DNA from: Ramazzottius varieornatus
Lineage: Eukaryota > Animalia > Tardigrada
Length of the DNA stretch: 64,000 bases
Direction of reading: 5' to 3'
Assembly: GCA_001949185.1 (NCBI GenBank)
Contig: BDGG01000004.1
Coordinates: 645,620 to 709,619 of the forward strand
Within the stretch, counting starts at the first letter, position 1. Each line of letters begins with the position of its first letter. Both the position numbers and the translations under genes were made by a program. Under the pieces are notes generated by a model. It made no database searches. It had not been told where the DNA came from and saw nothing but the letters and a program-made list of their open reading frames with translations. Of this stretch, positions 14,054-22,142 are shown one piece after another.

Positions 14054-16187
14054 ATGAGGTTTCGTTTCGCGGTTGCGCTCTTGATCGTCATTTTTTCTTC
14101 TTACGAAAGTTTACATGATGTTGTCGATGCCGACATGCTCCTGGCCTCGAAGATCCTACGGGACCGTGTAACGGGGTCCAGACAGCAGAAAGCCTTCAAT
14201 AACCTGCTGGCCACCAGGAACTCGTTTCAGGATAAGTCTGATGGACCTCGCAGGAACCTTAGCTCCAGCCTTGGAAAGCCCGCAAATATAATTTATGTCG
14301 CTTACCAGCGGAACTATTACAACTACGACAAGTTCCCGCCATATCTGTCTGGTATCGTGTTTACTGGTGGCAGTTCGTTACTCGCATTGTCCATACATCA
14401 CATTCGGAATATTGTATCTTGCAGAGAATGTTGGTCTAAAAACAGCTAAATCAGCCGCGGAGAACCGCAAGAACTACCTGTCCGTTACTGGCTTTGGACC
14501 TGTACCTCGCCTAAAAGATGGCAACGCTACCCATCTCTACGACTACGAGACGGTGTCTTCCAATCGCATTGACGACAGGATACTTTATTCGGAACAGATG
14601 CCTCCTACCACGGTGCCACCCGTACTTCCTGTACCGGAGTTGACCACCAACAAGCCCAGTCCACCTTCTGGAACACCTACTATATCGCAAGGGAGCACCA
14701 GCACCGCTCACGCCTACACGCCAGCTTGTGCTCGAAGTCAGCTGCAGACAATCTGCTTGGACGATCCTTTCTACCCAACGTAATTGTATTCCCCCAAAAT
14801 GTTTTCTAGCTTTGGGTGTAACATCGATAATTTCATTCTTGAATCGCAACTGCACTAGTATGTTTCTTTTAGAGACCTGGTGAAAGAAGCTGTACTGCAA
14901 GAGTCCGAGCATTTCACCAAGCTCTACGCGGAGGTAGCCTTCCAAAGTGCCGACAACCTCTGCGATGGACTATCGAGGACCGACGAAGAGAAATACTGCA
15001 ACGTGTTTTCACAAATCCATCCGATTAGGTAACGTAACCGAATCAGCCATTTCCGTTTCCAAATCCCACTTGATGAACTTGAACTCAACTGTATACTGGC
15101 TTACCCTAACAGTGCGTCTAATTCCTGGACGGTCAACCATCTCAACGCACCGTTAAATCCGACAGTTGCCAGTGCTACCACCGTGGACAAGGGGTGGCAG
15201 TTACCACTTCCAGCGTCTGCCGCAGAAGACCTACGTATGCGAGCGGAAGCCAGTGGGAATCCGGCGGCTCTGCAGGACCCGGTTCTTAACAGCAAAGGCT
15301 ACGTCTGTCATTCAGTGATCCATTACGCCCGGATCATGAGAGCCAAGAACCACCGGGGACAGTGGCGGGTAATCGTAAACATTCCGGGTCACACGCAGAC
15401 ATCTCGGATAGAAGAATGCACGAAACCGTTAGAACGATGCCACTATATCTCCCCAAAGCTCAACAGCGCCTGCATCCAGAAGTCAGTAATCGGAAATTCT
15501 CGCCGATCAACGGCCTTGTTCGCTGATTGATTCATATTTTTTTGCAGGTGGAACTTCCAAAGGTTACTGGCATGGGATAAATACAATGGTTTCGAAATGG
15601 ACATATTCCGCTTACCTGTTGCTTGTTCCTGTTTCATCCGCCCAAAAACCGCTTCCCCACTACTTCAGTCTCAGAAGTTCCCAGCGGTGACCAATAATAT
15701 GGCACCACCTTTCGTACCACCCATGTCCATGTCTCCACCCAAGCCAATGCCTGTGCATGCACCGAGTAACCCGGTTTCGACGTCCATTAAAATTTCATCA
15801 GGCACCTCCAGCAACCGAAATTTTAACACACCGCCTGACGCTCCTCACAACATTCCGCAACAGGTCCAGCAGAAGATGCAGGCCCAACCTGCAAACAGCT
15901 GGAAGGAGGAAAGACCGAAGAACGTGCTGCTACAGCAGGGTTCTCCGTCGCTAAGCGAAACCGACCACTGGTTGGCCATGCAGTCTTCCTTACATCCCAA
16001 GCAACGAGGTTTGTCCGGACAGGGAAACGCTGGTCCGATTGATACCAACGCTGTTCAACTATATCATCAATATCTAGCAAACATGTACCCATATCAGCTG
16101 CAAAACAACCGTCAGAGTTTTCCATCAAACTTGCAAATGCACGACCGTAAGCGACATCAACGGGATCCATCCGGAAGATACGATTGA
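14054..16187 (+). CDS. NT1: Spaetzle-family cystine-knot ligand, most like Neurotrophin 1/Spz2 (multi-exon)
   Basis: Signal peptide MRFRFAVALLIVIFSS; prodomain CLDDPFYP; knot CHSVIHYARIMRAKNHRGQWRVIVNIPGHTQTSRIEEC...CHYI...CIQK / WNFQRLLAWDKYNGFEMDIFRLPVACSC; long Pro/Gln-rich tail after the knot as in Drosophila NT1. Confidence 0.88.
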
Positions 16188-17193
16188 CATGCACAATTAC
16201 GGTAGAAAAGCACTTCAGAGAAAACTGAAGCTCTGCAGCTTATTCTGTTCTGTTCTGTTGGCTATGCACTGCACAGGCGACCAATTTTACAAATGGGTCG
16301 AGTAGTAATCTTTGTCGAGATTTTCGTTGAACGCGCTGTACTCTTCATCCAGTTTGAGGTAGGCATGTTCGAGATGAGGGGGCAGAAGAGAGCCTAGTTG
16401 GGCGGTGATTTCAGCAAACAAAGGACGACTGGCGGGCTCTTTGGCCCAGCACTTCTGCATAATGCCATACTTAAAACATACTTTTCTATCGTCAGGGTCA
16501 GACTTAATGGAATATCAATAAAGTCTACGAAGCAAGATTATATGCTATACGCACACAGGGTTCGAGGCATGAGTTGGCTGTCCCAGCCTACCGTTGGATA
16601 ACAGGAAGTCACGGAGTTGCTCACAGGACAAAACCTTCGGCAGCTCATCTTCATACGGAAGACGTCCTAAGGTTAGAGTTTCCCATAAAGTGATGCCGAA
16701 ACACCACACGTCCGACTTGATACTGTAAGTGCCATGCCGCAGAATGGATTCCGGTGCTAACCATCGAAGCGGCAGTTCCACCTGGAAATGAATCGTTCCA
16801 ATGAACCATCTGGCAACGAGGTACTCATGAAATAACGACTGGGTGGCCGTATTCGGAGCATATGCAAACGTCTACATTGTCACTTTGCATTGCGTATTCC
16901 GTTTTTTTGCGGGTCATGCCAAAATCGGAAATCTTGACCGTCATTGCAGAGTCAAGGAGAATATTACGAGCAGCAAGGTCGCGATGGATCATATTACGCG
17001 AGAACACAAAATCCATGCCGCGACTTATCTGGAAATCGAAGTGAACAAGGTCGTCCGCGCTCGAAATGAATGGAGTCTGGTGACGAAACGTGGTCCATAA
17101 CAATGTACTGATTTTCTAGGTCATTAAGGCCTGTCGTTGGAACATCCTGAACCGGGAGTAAATCATAATTGCCCTTGGTCGTTGCCTACGCTG

Positions 17194-18016
17194 CTGTAGT
17201 AGTCTCATTCACAGCACTGTTACAATTCACAGCTACACGACCCCTGGTTTTTAACTGGTGGCTGCGCATCACGATGCCACGCCCATCTCCAAGGTGGTTC
17301 CTGTCCGGATCACAGCAATGATTTGATTGTCTTGATTGGCCAAATTGTCGTCAAAACCGGCAAAACGACTAGTTCCTAGGACCTACTCCGCTTTTTGAAT
17401 ATTAACAACTTAGGTCCTGGGAACCACTTTCAAATTTCAGGTTGTACACAAAATCCAGATTTACTTAACAAATGTACAGCATTCCTTGAAGTAAATCTAG
17501 AAATGCACGTTCAGGTTCGTTGCAAACCCGCACAACACTGGCGCAAAGGCATTCTAAGGTAACCGGACTCCAAGGATAAAGTGCACGTTCCCTGTTGGCC
17601 GGTAAAATCCTTATGACGATCATTTGTTCAGTATTGCAAAAATAAGTTCTTGTAGCGAGGTTCAGGGTTCGCATGAAGCAGCATGCTGGACCATTTGTGC
17701 CAGTATTGTGCGGGTTTGCAAGAAGGCTTGCCGTGCATTTGTTAAGTAAATCTGGATTTTGTGTACAACCTGAACTTTGAAAGTGGTTCCCAGGACCTAG
17801 GTTGTCAGTATTCAAAAAGCGGAGTAGGTCCTAGGAACTAGTCGTTTTGCCGGTTTTGACGACAATTTGGCCAATTAAGACACTCAACTAATTGCTGCGA
17901 TCCAGACAGGAACCACCTTGGAGATGGGCGTAGCATCGGGATGCGCAGCCACCAGTTAAAAATCGGAGGGCGAGTAGCTGTGAATTGTAAAAGTGCTGTG
18001 AATGAGACCACTACAG
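17194..18016. mobile_element. Foldback/MITE-like element with ~300 bp terminal inverted repeats and 3-bp TSD (CTG)
   Basis: 17194-~17480 is a near reverse complement of ~17735-18016 (similarity continues inward after an indel); CTG on both sides (17191-17193, 18017-18019); no transposase. Confidence 0.85.
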
Positions 18017-18186
18017 CTGCAGCTCCATGGTTCGTGGGATCGAGCCCGTTCAACCGAATATTTCAAAGGATTGCGAAGATACTTGTCCAGGGAACCTAAC
18101 GAGCAGTACTCCATAACGAGCATGGGGTCACCTACAGTACAAACCTTGGCGTAAAAAGGTCCGGCACATGGGGTGGCTACCAGATG

Positions 18187-19151
18187 ATTTGCTTTATTCA
18201 AACAAATAACGTTTTCTTCAAAAGAAGACCACAATAAAACAGGAGACTAAATCAAAATCAACAAGTTACGCGGACATGGTTCTTCCCTTCCTAAGCTTTA
18301 AAACGTCAAGTTTTTCTTCGAGTCCTTTAGTCTCCTTCGCAGTACCCATAACACAAAAAGCATTACCTCGCTGTATGCCAAGAGACAAGCGCTGTTTGAA
18401 ATAGTGAAGAGATCTAGTCTCAAAAGAAAACTCAACAAGCTTCTTCCCGATCGCGTTGATCAATTCCGTCGCTGCAGGTCCCCAAGATCCGAAGGGCTCG
18501 AATCGCAAAGGAACGAAGAGGTACTGTGAAGCGATGCCTTGGTATTTCTGGATCTTTCTCTCTTCCGCGTCCTCGGCGGCAGCTCTCACATTCTCGCTTG
18601 TCTTTCCAACGTAGGACTTCGCTAATGTATCTATCACAGTCACATCCCGAACTAATTCCTTCCCATTCTTCCAAGGTATCATGGTCTTTCCATCAGGTCT
18701 CAGTTCATCGTCCCGCGAAAGTCCTAGTGGTTCTAGAACCGCCGGAACTTGTGCTGAAACGAGGGCTCTTCGCACCGACTCGTTCAGACTAGCTTGCCTA
18801 CTGTGGCGTCCCGAGCTCCTTGGACAGCTCAGACCGTGGAGCCCATACTCGTCGACTACTTCTCCACAGCGGCACATGTGAGGCTGACATAGTCTCGATC
18901 CTAGCCACAGCCCAACGCTGATCCGCAGTGTGTTGTCGTCGAGGAGATTCCCAAGTGAGGAAGCCGGCAGAGCGTGCAGCCAGGTTCCGGAGATCTTTGT
19001 CGAAACAGCCATCAGTCTTGCCTTGCTTGTCATATTGCTCTGGTCCATCAGACTTCCGAATTCCTCCGTCACCATAGGAAGGTCCCAGGCACGCTGCTGT
19101 CGGCGAAGAGCGGCTACCAGAACATTGCGTGTCAAGCTACAACAGCTGGAT
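18187..19151 (-). mobile_element. 5'-truncated CRE-type non-LTR retrotransposon (Zn knuckle + restriction-like endonuclease)
   Basis: ORF 18266-19135: WLHALP, CRCG...HGLSC, RPDG, DVTV, AEERKIQKY, FVPL, IQRGNA. AATAAA near the 3' end; 6-bp direct repeat CAGATG at 18181-18186 and 19152-19157; lies inside RTK intron 18132-19197. Confidence 0.85.
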
Positions 19152-21137
19152 CAGATGTAATGTATGCATACGCGGAGAGAACAAGGTGTAAACTTACCCA
19201 CAAGGACTACACCGATAAAGTTAACAATGTTCGCGTGACGTCCGACTTTCATTAGCATCTCCATCTCCCGAACGATATTGTCCATGGCTTATTCTCTTAG
19301 TTCTCTTATCCTTTGCCAAAAGTTTCACAGCAACGAAGTGCTCATTAGCTAGCTTGCTCTGCGTGATAGGCCTAAACTTATGATTGGCAGGCTTCCAGTC
19401 CACCAAACGATCCTTCACTACAACTCCGAAATTCCTTTTTCCCAACACCTTATCTGGACCTGCAGAAGTACGATATTCTGTCGCAGAGTAACGCATTTTG
19501 TAAACACAGCCCTGATACTCAGTCACCTGCAAGGGGATTTACCAGACACAAGTTCTTGGGCGAAATTTCGTAGTGTGTTAAAGCCCAGGCAAAACGGAGA
19601 CGTATCTTCTTTTCCAGTGTGTTCTACAATCATTGTACCATATAATGTACCGAAACTGTAACAACCGAGCAGCCATAAAATGGTGTGTAGTAGGCAGAAC
19701 TACCTTTCGGCTTCGTCGTTTCCAAACCCAAGCGGTAATAAGGAAGCAAAGAATTAGCGCGATCCGGACGATTTCTCCTACTACGCCGTAGATTTCAGAC
19801 ATCGCCAGTGGACCGACAGTACTTGGTCGGTCTGTTGCAGCACAAGATATCTCCAACCATTCTTGATCTGTCGCGATCGGACCACAATCACAAGCCTCAG
19901 GAACTCGAGGATCAAGGCAGTTTCTGTACAAAGTGTAAGTATGCCGAACGGACTGGTTGTTAACTCCGCACTGGATGAGCTTTCGCGCTGACTCCAACGC
20001 AGCTGCTGGAGGTTGTATACCTGAAAACAGCGAAACTGTCGAAACTGGGCTGGGCATCCGGCTGTACATGTGTACGTAGCAGATTTACAACGATGGTTTC
20101 ACTGCAACCTGCAGATGGTCCGGATAACCTCGATCAGCAATGTAATGAGGTTGATGCTTCGAGGAAGAGCTACACACCTGATCGCTCGCCGTAGTCTCCA
20201 AGGAAAAAGACTGATTGGCCCTTACCATTCCAGTGTTTGCTAAAGGAACATTGACTAGTCCAACCTCTGCCCTCGAAGATGGTACCATCGCCGCGAATCA
20301 GGAAACTAAATACAGGATTAAAAATGAGGTTGCAGATTGAGATTGTATACGGAGGCTTGACAGTTAGTTAATCATGCCAATATCGGAAAAGTTTCTGGCC
20401 AGATCACCATAGATATGTAGGTACTGAATCGCGGCAACTTCCGCTTTGCACTCCTGGTACGTTAGGCAGTCAGCTCTTCCAGTCTCACTAAGGATAACGT
20501 GCGATATAGGAAGGTCCAAAGGGGTAAGGCGCTCCTTGGGGGCTAAAGCGTTCCAGCTTTCGCGCCCAGTTATGGGCGGACAGAGCATACTCATTCGGCC
20601 AACCAGTTGATCAACGAAAGTGAAGAAGACGTTGGCAGAAATCTCCTCTCGGTCTGTGACGCTCAACCCTGCTGTAGTTTCAGATAGCACTGGTATACTG
20701 TGATCGAATACAGGAAAACTTCGCACAATATATTGCACGTTTTCTTTGTGCTGCTGTAGTGCACTTCATCTTCTAACTGATTCGGACGACTAATTTACAG
20801 TAACTTAGCCGGTAGACTACGGGCTTGACCCATTGTGTGTTTTACTGGCTACAAGCCAATCACAAGTATTTGTAAGCCGGAAAGATTAGATTGCGTGTGC
20901 AGACAATTTGCGGTGAGTCCCATAGTTCTAGACTATCGTGTACAGATTGTCGAACACGTGCAAAAGATGAACTGTACAAATGAACGAGGTGATAATAACG
21001 CTGGAAGGTACTTTACTGACCGTGGTTTCATTGCCTTGGTTTGACGTCACATGCAGCACGTTACACGGTACGTACACCCGGATATGGTCACAAGCGGGTG
21101 AGATAATATTCTTCGTCTAGCTTCTGATTCAGTATGT

Positions 21138-21358
21138 GGGCTGCGGGCAAGGTTTCTTAGAAGTCTGGGGTCATAGCGGCACAGCTGATAAAACTTTCAG
21201 AAAGGCAAGGGAGGGTTTCGGGCTTTTTTTAAAGATTCTCGGCCTCCACATGGCAAGCCTCGGCCACTATCTTGAGCTACCCTGGCTTTTGTCTGAATTT
21301 CCTCAACTTTGCCTCAACGCCGTGACCCCAGACTTTTGAGGAACTTTGCCCAGAGCCC
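21138..21358. mobile_element. MITE with GGG...CCC termini and 4-bp TSD (Sola2-like), copy 1
   Basis: TIR GGGCTGCGGGCAAGGTTTCTTAGAAGTCTGGGGTCA vs TGACCCCAGACTTTTGAGGAACTTTGCCCAGAGCCC; ATGT on both flanks; homologous to 47175-47402. Confidence 0.75.
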
Positions 21359-22142
21359 ATGTACTGTACACTCATGAAAAGAAAGCTTGGGTTAAAAAAA
21401 AGGCGGAAAAGGGTATAGTTTCTAGTGATATCCTTGGATCTTTCGAGAAACGTTTGTGTGATTTTCGACGAGCTGTTAGGTAAAGGGCGTTTTCGAGGGA
21501 ACTTCCCGGATCTTGACATGATACTTGACATGATACAAGTCTCAAAAGAGAAGCAGTTTTGGTCTGTTTTCGAAATTTGTTGCCGACTTGATTTATTAAT
21601 TGCTGGTGGCATTGACGTCACTATAAAGAACAGGACCTAGATATCGAAGGTGCTTTGAAATAAGAGAATCGGACTTCTGGATGAGGAGCTACAACGATTT
21701 TAGCAGAAGAGGGGGTGACGAATAAATTTTCGAGCAACTGTATATTTCACTGCCAATGTTCTAAAACAGACTCAAAGAACCTGGATATACGCGGATGGTT
21801 GTGAACATATGCTGACTTCTGTAGTGGCGCTCCCATATTTGCTAGATGAGATCTGCATCGTACTGATTACTGTACGACTGTACCTCACAGCTTCACGAAA
21901 CTAAAAATGTGGAAAAGGGTGGAAACGGTCGGGTCTCAGCTATTTAAGTGTGATACCTCCAACAACTACGGACTAAGAACGCACTCTGAAGAGATGAAGC
22001 ATTTCACTAACTTTACAACGCCAATATGTACTAGATTTCAACAAGGAAGTCAACGGATGGTGAGTTTGGTCCAGCAAGTATTTTGTATCGAACTACAATT
22101 GACTAGTTGGGCTGTCAACATTGATTCTTTCACATCCTCCGC

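What the first reader, a model, noticed from the sequence alone, without database searches (positions are those of the whole stretch)
16287..20740. Peptidoglycan-recognition (PGRP) domain fused to a receptor tyrosine kinase
Seen: on one strand, in order, three PGRP-fold exons (RESWNA.., DIG/FLIRGDGTIFEGRGW, PPAAALESARKLIQCGV), then in the same ORF as the last PGRP exon a TM helix with a basic stop-transfer (KRRSRK), then a split PVR/VEGFR-like tyrosine kinase. Known: PGRP amidases need His/His/Cys Zn ligands; here the HHT and GHR motifs read SET and RNC, so it is a non-catalytic sensor type, and it keeps the GRGW Arg linked to DAP-type peptidoglycan binding. Insect membrane PGRPs (PGRP-LC) are type II and signal through IMD, not through a kinase. 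Inference: a type I bacterial-cell-wall-sensing RTK, an architecture I do not recognise from characterised animal receptors and conceptually like plant LysM receptor kinases. This copy carries several lesions, so an intact paralogue should be sought.
Basis: partly seen in the sequence, partly recalled or inferred. Interest (0 to 1): 0.9.

Follow-up and report, generated by a model that had tools for sequence, protein, structure and literature searches.

The report
Dead copy of tardigrade PGRP-kinase receptor
This stretch of a tardigrade genome is a transcribed but broken duplicate of a real gene that joins a bacterial cell-wall (peptidoglycan) recognition domain to a membrane anchor and a tyrosine kinase; no paper found here describes that design in an animal, and an intact copy lies on another contig.

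Summary
On the minus strand, 20764-16287, three PGRP-homologous exons, a membrane helix with KRRSRK and a split tyrosine kinase lie in that order. RNA contigs from four studies splice the PGRP exons, the membrane exon and the first kinase exons into one message.

The window copy is a pseudogene:
- the intron-1 donor is lost, and the cryptic splice used instead stops the frame after about 64 codons;
- the frame breaks three times in the kinase;
- a LINE-like repeat captures splicing after exon 5;
- a foldback element sits in exon 6;
- no RNA covers the catalytic exons.

The genome is Ramazzottius varieornatus. An intact paralogue, RvY_06101 (613 aa), has Pfam Amidase_2 plus PK_Tyr. Homologues exist in Hypsibius exemplaris and Paramacrobiotus metropolitanus, and none was found outside tardigrades. 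The kinases form a tardigrade clade beside FGFRs, and some carry GH16 (GNBP-like) or MAM ectodomains instead.

'Type I' is not shown, because most members lack a signal peptide. Peptidoglycan sensing is inferred, not tested. I found no paper on this architecture.

The scan had already flagged the intact paralogue on other DNA (note s1-794823).

The parts
20408..20764 (-). Exon 1 as transcribed. Start codon at 20594-20592. N-terminal third of the PGRP domain (RESWNA 20564-20547; SET where amidase PGRPs have HHT).
   Evidence: RNA contigs end at 20726-20764 and splice at 20408. PDB phmmer hits only PGRPs, 3e-5. The Met aligns with the start Met of RvY_06101.
20306..20407 (-). Intron 1 as now spliced (102 nt, cryptic donor). 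It swallows the old exon tail 20407-20371 (..SDIGM). The ancestral donor position 20370-20369 reads TA instead of GT.
   Evidence: Joint 20408/20305 in all four runs. DNA comparison with the paralogue. Exon 1 leaves 1 base where exon 2 needs 2, so a stop follows two codons after the junction.
20176..20305 (-). Exon 2: middle of the PGRP domain (FLIRGDGTIFEGRGW 20304-20260).
   Evidence: PDB phmmer 3.5e-6, PGRPs only. 57% identical to RvY_06101 exon 2.
20019..20175 (-). Intron 2 (157 nt). Spliced out in one run only and retained in the contigs of the other three; retention gives a stop after GDYGERSGV.
   Evidence: table 5 and table 8.
19704..20018 (-). Exon 3: C-terminal third of PGRP (20012-19962; RNC where amidases have GHR), linker, membrane helix 19793-19722, basic stop-transfer KRRSRK 19721-19704.
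19527..19623 (-). Exon 4: juxtamembrane segment, 70% identical to RvY_06101 exon 4.
   Evidence: Joints 19704/19623 and 19525/19457.
19198..19459 (-). Exon 5: kinase N-lobe. Glycine loop reads GKRNFG (19442-19425), VAVK at 19334-19323. A one-base frame break near 19296 leads to a stop at about 19224.
   Evidence: The RNA contigs carry the same letters as the genome, with no indels (table 4).
18182..19136 (-). Terminal exon seen in RNA: a cryptic acceptor at 19136 leads into a 5'-truncated LINE-like repeat (19113-18189, same strand), which lies in ancestral intron 5.
   Evidence: Joint 19198/19136 in all four runs. At least 40 genomic copies share the 3' end and differ at the 5' end. The contig continuation beyond 18182 maps beside another copy on C3, so that part is chimeric.
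16879..18131 (-). Remains of exon 6. The ancestral acceptor is intact at 18132/18131. The frame breaks after LRNP (about 18066). A foldback element lies at 18020-17190 (298-nt arms, 92% complementary). The frame breaks again near 17090. Then comes the catalytic part (HRDLAARN 16986-16963, DFG 16926-16918).
   Evidence: There is no RNA on the coding parts.
16555..16781 (-). Exon 7: kinase C-lobe (PLRWLAPE 16772-16749), 75% identical to RvY_06101, no stop.
   Evidence: Zero RNA depth.
16287..16469 (-). Exon 8: end of the kinase and the C-terminal tail with the stop codon (16289-16287), 80% identical to RvY_06101.
   Evidence: Zero RNA depth, also over the presumed 3' UTR 16100-16286.

Best explanation
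The window holds a transcribed pseudogene, a Ramazzottius-lineage duplicate of RvY_06101. RvY_06101 is the intact member of a eutardigrade receptor family built as N-terminal PGRP domain, linker, one membrane helix, and a tyrosine kinase with a kinase insert.

Shown:
- The domains are homologous to PGRP and to tyrosine kinases.
- They are co-transcribed in the window copy.
- They form one uninterrupted 613-codon, 8-exon reading frame in the paralogue.
- The same order recurs in three tardigrade genera.

Shown for the window copy: the lost intron-1 donor forces a cryptic splice that ends the frame after about 64 codons. There are also three frame breaks, a LINE-like repeat that captures splicing after exon 5, and a foldback insertion in exon 6. 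No RNA was seen on the catalytic exons, so this copy cannot make a receptor.

Inferred for the family:
- The PGRP domain cannot act as an amidase, because zinc ligands are missing. It keeps the R-G-W signature tied to DAP-type peptidoglycan.
- It faces outward. This rests on the positive-inside rule, on cysteines conserved at positions where human PGRPs also have cysteines (from memory, disulfide positions), and on one member with a signal peptide.
- Polymeric peptidoglycan would cluster receptors, the kinases would phosphorylate each other, and phosphotyrosine signalling (probably MAPK-type) would follow. This would happen in an animal that lacks Imd, Relish and Dif/Dorsal.
For: PGRP homology, exon by exon. 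RvY_06101 (P0161): Amidase_2 5.7e-9, 36.8 bits against a cut-off of 26, and PK_Tyr 9.1e-75.

One transcript: single contigs run 20726-20408|20305-19704|19623-19525 and 20306-19704|19623-19525|19457-19198|19136-18506, with GT..AG introns on the minus strand.

Paralogue: found. My exon model has no stops and all-GT-AG introns of 61-171 nt, and it equals the database protein RvY_06101 exon for exon.

Homologues: H. exemplaris P0021 and P0153; P. metropolitanus P0003 and P0163-P0166, with PF01510 plus PF07714.

Lesions.

Long purifying selection before decay: dN 0.11-0.44 with saturated dS, and 75-80% identity with no stops in exons 7-8.

Zinc ligands absent, EGRGW conserved.

Membrane-helix flanks: net +3 to +6 on the kinase side against -2 to 0 on the PGRP side.

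The same kinase clade also carries GH16 ectodomains.

Tardigrades lack the Imd/NF-kB components: PMC7056985.
Against: No binding or kinase assay exists, so peptidoglycan sensing is inference.

The window copy, RvY_06101 and the five Paramacrobiotus models begin at the PGRP domain without a signal peptide. Outward placement would therefore need signal-anchor insertion of a roughly 200-residue N-terminal domain, which is unusual.

Its transcription rests on the public gene model and on an earlier unchecked scan note.

The absence of RNA on the catalytic exons of the window copy could partly reflect the tool's filter for human-like contigs. However, the non-conserved 3' UTR is also empty.

RvY_06101 has Met where PGRPs have the Tyr of DIGY, and it has lost one cysteine of the central pair.
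Confidence: 0.8

Rival explanations
1. The window copy is still a working gene that makes a shortened product, for example a PGRP-only or PGRP-plus-anchor decoy that tunes signalling by RvY_06101.
For: It is transcribed in runs from five studies. Exons 2-5 keep long open frames and correct splice sites. Truncated decoy PGRPs are known in insects (general knowledge).
Against: The only observed exon 1-exon 2 junction shifts the frame and gives a stop two codons later. The unspliced form stops after ..DIGMIN. Intron 2 retention adds another stop. The result is a peptide of about 64-77 residues that lacks two thirds of the PGRP fold and the membrane helix.
Confidence: 0.06
2. The family is real, but the PGRP domain is not a bacterial sensor. 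It has been co-opted to bind an endogenous ligand, or it sits in the cytosol, so these are developmental or other receptors rather than immune ones.
For: There is no signal peptide in most members. The PGRP domains are divergent: the two H. exemplaris members fall below the Pfam threshold, and RvY_06101 has lost the DIGY Tyr and one cysteine. The nearest outside kinases are FGFRs, which are developmental receptors.
Against: EGRGW and the groove-lining core are conserved across genera. The cysteines at positions shared with human PGRPs are kept in nearly all members, which argues for an oxidising, extracellular setting. The same kinase clade independently carries GH16 beta-glucan-recognition-like ectodomains, one with a clear signal peptide. 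A cytosolic PGRP domain would place the kinase outside the cell.
Confidence: 0.2
3. Two neighbouring genes (a membrane PGRP and a separate kinase), or a chance PGRP resemblance, were read as one.
For: Pfam gave no Amidase_2 hit on the single window exons. No RNA was seen on the distal kinase exons.
Against: Spliced contigs join the PGRP exons to the kinase N-lobe exon. The order recurs at a second locus as one open frame and in about eight proteins of two other genera. The PDB searches return only PGRPs.
Confidence: 0.02

Closest known systems
Drosophila PGRP-LC / PGRP-LE (non-catalytic sensor PGRPs of the Imd pathway)
   Same: A PGRP domain without the amidase zinc ligands, membrane-tethered, keeping the Arg and Gly-Trp positions linked to DAP-type peptidoglycan (PMC8347126).
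   Different: PGRP-LC is type II, with the PGRP domain C-terminal, and it signals through a RHIM-like motif to Imd and Relish (general knowledge). Here the PGRP domain is N-terminal, the cytoplasmic part is a tyrosine kinase, and tardigrades lack Imd and Relish (PMC7056985).
FGFR and class III/V receptor tyrosine kinases (Kit, VEGFR/PVR)
   Same: Single-pass receptor, a tyrosine kinase with [11 protein letters not shown] and PxRWxAPE, and a kinase insert of about 55 residues. The best outside sequence matches are FGFRs at 38-41% identity. The best PDB matches are EGFR, VEGFR1, Kit and Met.
   Different: There are no Ig domains. The kinase falls in a separate tardigrade clade (support 100/98). 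Most members have no signal peptide.
Plant LysM receptor kinases (CERK1 with LYM1/LYM3) and bacterial PASTA kinases (PknB/PrkC)
   Same: The same logic: an extracellular cell-wall-glycan-binding domain wired directly to a cytoplasmic kinase (general knowledge).
   Different: The binding folds are unrelated (LysM and PASTA against the PGRP/Amidase_2 fold) and those kinases are Ser/Thr kinases. This is analogy only; Pfam finds no LysM or PASTA domain here.
RvY_06101 (R. varieornatus), OQV13513.1 (H. exemplaris), XP_055349571.1 and relatives (P. metropolitanus)
   Same: True family members with the same domain order. The window copy is closest to RvY_06101 in every exon, at 42-80% identity.
   Different: Those have open reading frames and the window copy does not. 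In the databases they are named only 'hypothetical', 'uncharacterized' or 'FGFR-like'.

Membership tests
PGRP domain (Pfam PF01510 Amidase_2, PGRP type) | Significant sequence match across the whole domain | tested here: met
   The three window exons hit only PGRPs in the PDB (3e-5, 3.5e-6, 0.024), on successive parts of the domain. The paralogue P0161 scores 36.8 bits against a cut-off of 26. Single window exons are below the Pfam threshold.
PGRP domain (Pfam PF01510 Amidase_2, PGRP type) | Zinc ligands His/His/Cys of the catalytic (amidase) subtype | tested here: not met
   The window reads SET and RNC; RvY_06101 reads SQT and GSY; the Paramacrobiotus and Hypsibius members lack the whole GHR..C segment. 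The domain is therefore of the recognition type, not an amidase.
PGRP domain (Pfam PF01510 Amidase_2, PGRP type) | Binds peptidoglycan | not testable with these tools
   A binding assay is needed. Only the R-G-W signature is seen (PMC8347126).
Receptor tyrosine kinase | Tyrosine-kinase catalytic domain with its signature motifs | tested here: met
   PK_Tyr_Ser-Thr at 1.6e-19 and 3e-15 on window exons and 9.1e-75 on P0161. [11 protein letters not shown] and PLRWLAPE are present. The window copy has GKRNFG in place of GKGNFG.
Receptor tyrosine kinase | One membrane helix between the ligand-binding and kinase parts, with the basic flank on the kinase side | tested here: met
   Window helix 19793-19722 followed by KRRSRK. 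Family flanks are net +3 to +6 on the C-terminal side.
Receptor tyrosine kinase | Cleavable N-terminal signal peptide (type I topology) | tested here: not met
   The window RNA starts near 20764 with no upstream exon. The N-termini of the window copy, RvY_06101 and the five Paramacrobiotus models are not hydrophobic. Of the two Hypsibius models, P0153 has a signal-like start and P0021 a non-hydrophobic extension.
Receptor tyrosine kinase | Intact reading frame in this window | tested here: not met
   Lost donor, three frame breaks and two mobile-element insertions.
FGFR / PVR-VEGFR subfamilies | Ig-like ectodomains, and a kinase that groups inside the subfamily | tested here: not met
   There are no Ig domains. 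The tardigrade kinases form their own clade apart from 12 FGFRs. The sampling had no VEGFR/PVR row, so placement relative to that group was not tested.
PGRP-LC-type Imd receptor | Type II orientation with a C-terminal PGRP domain and an Imd-recruiting cytoplasmic tail | tested here: not met
   The PGRP domain is N-terminal to the helix and the cytoplasmic part is a kinase. No Imd or Relish homologue has been reported in tardigrades (PMC7056985).
Unprocessed (duplicated) pseudogene | Keeps the intron-exon layout of a functional paralogue but carries disabling changes | tested here: met
   The exon layout matches RvY_06101. The disabling changes are as listed above. The RNA agrees with the genome at the exon 5 frame break and at the dead donor.

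The most novel reading that the evidence does not exclude
Eutardigrades, which lack Imd, Relish and Dif/Dorsal, have wired classical microbial-glycan recognition domains (PGRP, and GH16/GNBP-like) directly onto a lineage-specific receptor tyrosine kinase. These PGRP-RTKs and GH16-RTKs would then be the animals' primary sensors of bacteria and fungi, which would make them the first animal receptor kinases for peptidoglycan or beta-glucan. The window copy records birth-and-death turnover in that family.
Probability: 0.35. Interest if true: 0.85.

Novelty: new variant of a known kind. Interest (0 to 1): 0.6.

Why it matters
Animals are known to sense peptidoglycan through PGRPs that feed Imd/Toll, or through NOD proteins. 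Direct coupling of a cell-wall-binding domain to a kinase is known from plants (LysM kinases) and bacteria (PASTA kinases).

A PGRP-tyrosine-kinase receptor conserved in three tardigrade genera would be an animal version of that logic. It sits beside GH16-kinase receptors on the same kinase scaffold.

It offers a concrete, testable answer to how tardigrades detect bacteria without the Imd/NF-kB route (PMC7056985).

The window locus itself is the decayed duplicate. Its value is twofold. Its RNA gives direct proof that PGRP and kinase exons share one message. It also shows that the family turns over.

Tried and rejected
- Pfam on single window exons gave no Amidase_2 hit. Homology had to be shown with PDB phmmer and through the paralogue.
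- An Amidase_2 scan of the whole genome found only the two canonical PGRP genes (C14, C10). It missed both kinase-linked copies because their domains are divergent and split by introns.
- The representative-library search with kinase exon 6 was swamped by multi-kinase proteins. The useful rows were picked out by length and checked with Pfam.
- A search for long proteins with a PGRP N-terminus found no kinase fusion outside tardigrades, and neither did the ESM Atlas look-up. Both have limited reach, so absence elsewhere is not proven.
- The contig continuation beyond 18182 looked like a splice to a further exon. It maps next to another copy of the repeat on C3, so it is an assembly chimera and says nothing about the 3' end of this transcript.
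- Paper searches for PGRP with receptor tyrosine kinase, for the Pfam names, for RvY_06101 and for tardigrade terms gave nothing relevant. The supplements of PMC7056985 are not held.
- Structure prediction and fold search were not run. The PGRP domain is split over three exons, a joined model was not to be submitted, and a whole-protein model would be dominated by kinase matches.
All searches were exon by exon by reference, or used database proteins.
Full report
**What is in the window**

Six-frame reading of 16000-21500 shows all the elements on the minus strand:
- three open stretches with PGRP-like sequence: 20765-20367, 20367-20173 and 20084-19581;
- in the last of these, a hydrophobic helix followed by KRRSRK;
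- six stretches that together make a tyrosine kinase.

Pfam confirms the kinase exon by exon: PK_Tyr_Ser-Thr at 1.6e-19 for 17103-16825 and 3e-15 for 16781-16545. Pfam does not see Amidase_2 in the single PGRP exons.

phmmer against all PDB sequences returns only PGRPs for the first two pieces (best E 3e-5 and 3.5e-6) and PGRPs as the top five of six rows for the third (0.024). The three pieces match successive parts of the domain.

**One gene or two**

Public runs of the same organism hold about half of the stretch. I laid contigs from four runs of four studies on 16100-21900.

They show five joints with CT..AC ends on the plus strand, which are GT..AG introns of a minus-strand message. The contigs are therefore RNA-derived. 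The introns are:
- 20407-20306;
- 20175-20019 (spliced in one run only, retained in the others);
- 19703-19624;
- 19524-19458;
- 19197-19137.

Single contigs run from PGRP exon 1 through the membrane exon into exon 4. Others run from PGRP exon 2 through exon 5. Exon 5 carries the glycine loop and the VAVK lysine.

So the PGRP, membrane and kinase N-lobe exons are on one transcript. The 5' ends scatter between 20726 and 20764, with no joint to an upstream exon.

**The window copy is broken**

Translating each RNA-defined exon in phase and aligning it to the paralogue gives these lesions:

1. The ancestral intron-1 donor reads TA at 20370-20369. A cryptic donor at 20408 is used instead. It leaves one base where exon 2 needs two, so the message stops two codons into exon 2, after about 64 codons. 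The unspliced form stops after ..DIGMIN.
2. Intron 2 is mostly retained, and it contains a stop.
3. The glycine loop reads GKRNFG instead of GKGNFG.
4. Exon 5 has a one-base frame break near 19296. The RNA contigs carry the same letters as the genome.
5. After exon 5 the message splices at 19136 into a repeat (19113-18189). That repeat has at least 40 copies sharing one end and truncated at the other, the pattern of a LINE 3' fragment. The ancestral acceptor at 18132/18131 is intact but was not seen in use.
6. Exon 6 loses its frame after LRNP (about 18066). It then carries a foldback element with 298-nt arms (18020-17190) and loses its frame again near 17090.

No contig covers 16100-17263 in any of the four runs, and that includes the non-conserved 3' UTR. 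The tool warns that human-like contigs may be filtered out, so the empty catalytic exons alone would be weak evidence; the empty UTR strengthens it.

The contig sequence beyond 18182 maps beside another copy of the repeat on contig C3. It is therefore a chimera.

**The intact paralogue and the organism**

Searching the window's own assembly (55.8 Mb, 200 contigs) with the PGRP exons found one other locus, C2:7958275-7960703. All eight exon homologues lie there within 2.4 kb, in the same order.

An exon model with GT-AG introns of 61-171 nt gives 613 codons without a stop. The same 613-residue protein is in the public databases as 'hypothetical protein RvY_06101 [Ramazzottius varieornatus]', on a contig of the same length as C2. 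It matches my model exon for exon.

Pfam on it gives Amidase_2 at 5.7e-9 (above the curated cut-off, residues 31-151) and PK_Tyr at 9.1e-75 (residues 264-578). The membrane helix is at 203-225. All kinase motifs are intact.

The genome has four PGRP loci in all: two canonical ones and these two.

The window copy is closest to RvY_06101 in every exon, from 42% identity in the PGRP part to 75-80% in the C-lobe. Synonymous sites are saturated while dN is 0.11-0.44. The duplicate was therefore kept under constraint for a long time before it decayed.

**The family**

The representative search, cluster look-ups and homologue searches found these members:
- Hypsibius exemplaris: OQV13513.1 (603 aa) and a second protein of 664 aa.
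- Paramacrobiotus metropolitanus: four proteins of 553-611 aa, and one model of 1180 aa that is two such units in tandem.

The Paramacrobiotus proteins all carry PF01510 plus PF07714. The Hypsibius N-termini are below the Pfam threshold but align to the PGRP exons.

A search for long proteins with a similar PGRP N-terminus found kinase fusions in no other taxon. The Atlas showed none either. Both searches have limited reach.

In a kinase-domain tree (27 rows; three poorly aligned rows were left out), the tardigrade kinases form one clade with support 100/98, apart from 12 FGFRs. That clade also includes kinases with GH16, MAM or very short ectodomains.

**PGRP domain type**

In the family alignment the amidase zinc ligands are missing: the first-ligand site reads SET or SQT in the Ramazzottius copies, and the GHR..C segment is absent or changed in all members.

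EGRGW is conserved in almost all members. It contains the Arg equivalent to PGRP-LE Arg254 and the Gly-Trp pair linked to DAP-type binding. The cited paper itself notes exceptions to this rule (PMC8347126).

**Topology**

The helix flanks obey the positive-inside rule strongly, with the kinase on the inside.

However, the window copy, RvY_06101 and the five Paramacrobiotus models begin three to four residues before the first conserved PGRP cysteine, which is exactly where secreted PGRPs have their signal-peptide cleavage site. The window RNA shows no upstream exon. Of the two Hypsibius models, one has a signal-like N-terminus and the other a non-hydrophobic N-terminal extension.

The N-terminal cysteine and the cysteine in LIQC align to cysteines of human PGRPs. 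From my memory of PGRP structures, those cysteines form a disulfide. The central C..C pair is kept in most members. Together these favour an extracellular domain.

So 'type I' is not shown. A signal-anchor (type III) insertion, or missed 5' exons, remain open.

**Mechanism**

Shown: the architecture, co-transcription, conservation, and the absence of amidase ligands.

Inferred:
- an outward PGRP domain binds peptidoglycan;
- the polymeric ligand clusters receptors;
- the kinases trans-phosphorylate;
- phosphotyrosine signalling follows.

Tardigrades were reported to lack Imd, Relish, Dif/Dorsal and the intracellular Toll components, and to have PGRP homologues only in eutardigrades (PMC7056985). 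That paper does not mention a kinase fusion. I found no paper that does.

**Earlier scan note**

Note s1-794823 describes a PGRP-RTK on another piece of this genome, evidently RvY_06101, as transcribed and spliced as one message. I confirmed the gene model but could not lay reads on that locus.

**Verdict**

The architecture is real, conserved in eutardigrades and undescribed in the searchable literature. This locus is its transcribed pseudogene copy.

Noticed in passing
G000 C3:1118247-1120570(+), C3:1131109-1133615(-), C6:1796256-1798455(+), C11:1716948-1719283(+), perhaps C19:258182-261719(+); L011, L012: GH16 (GNBP/beta-glucan-recognition-like) exons lie 1-3 kb upstream of kinase exons of the same tardigrade clade, on the same strand. 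Two of these loci are colinear with P. metropolitanus P0266 (signal peptide, GH16, membrane helix, kinase) and have a membrane helix in between. A second pattern-recognition domain therefore appears to be wired to this kinase. PMC7056985 reported finding no GNBP1/3 homologues in its samples.
   Followed up: partly
P0085 (P. metropolitanus, 609 aa): A MAM domain, a membrane helix and a kinase of the same clade, which is a third ectodomain on the same scaffold.
   Followed up: no
P0003 / P0151 (P. metropolitanus, 1180 / 1189 aa): The RefSeq model contains two complete PGRP-helix-kinase units in tandem. It is either two neighbouring genes merged by the annotation or a real double receptor.
   Followed up: no
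window 19113-18189: A LINE-like 3' fragment with at least 40 genomic copies at 63-94% identity. Its 289-codon open frame (19135-18266) has no Pfam match. RNA depth over it is about 2.5 times that of the flanking exons, so several copies are transcribed.
   Followed up: partly
window 18236 and 18239: The RNA contigs read G where the genome has A: at 18236 in all four runs, at 18239 in three of four. Both places lie inside the repeat-derived part. This may be a strain difference, another copy of the repeat, or editing; it was not resolved (table 3).
   Followed up: no
window 18020-17190: A foldback element with 298-nt inverted arms (92% complementary) and a 235-nt centre, inserted in the kinase-insert region of exon 6. 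An inner 47-nt inverted pair lies at 17501-17547 / 17694-17740.
   Followed up: partly
L008:1275-1292 (RvY_06101 N-terminus): The protein starts MGSNCS, which fits the N-myristoylation pattern M-G-x-x-x-S with a cysteine nearby. The window copy and the homologues do not share it, so it is probably coincidence, but it bears on the open topology question.
   Followed up: no
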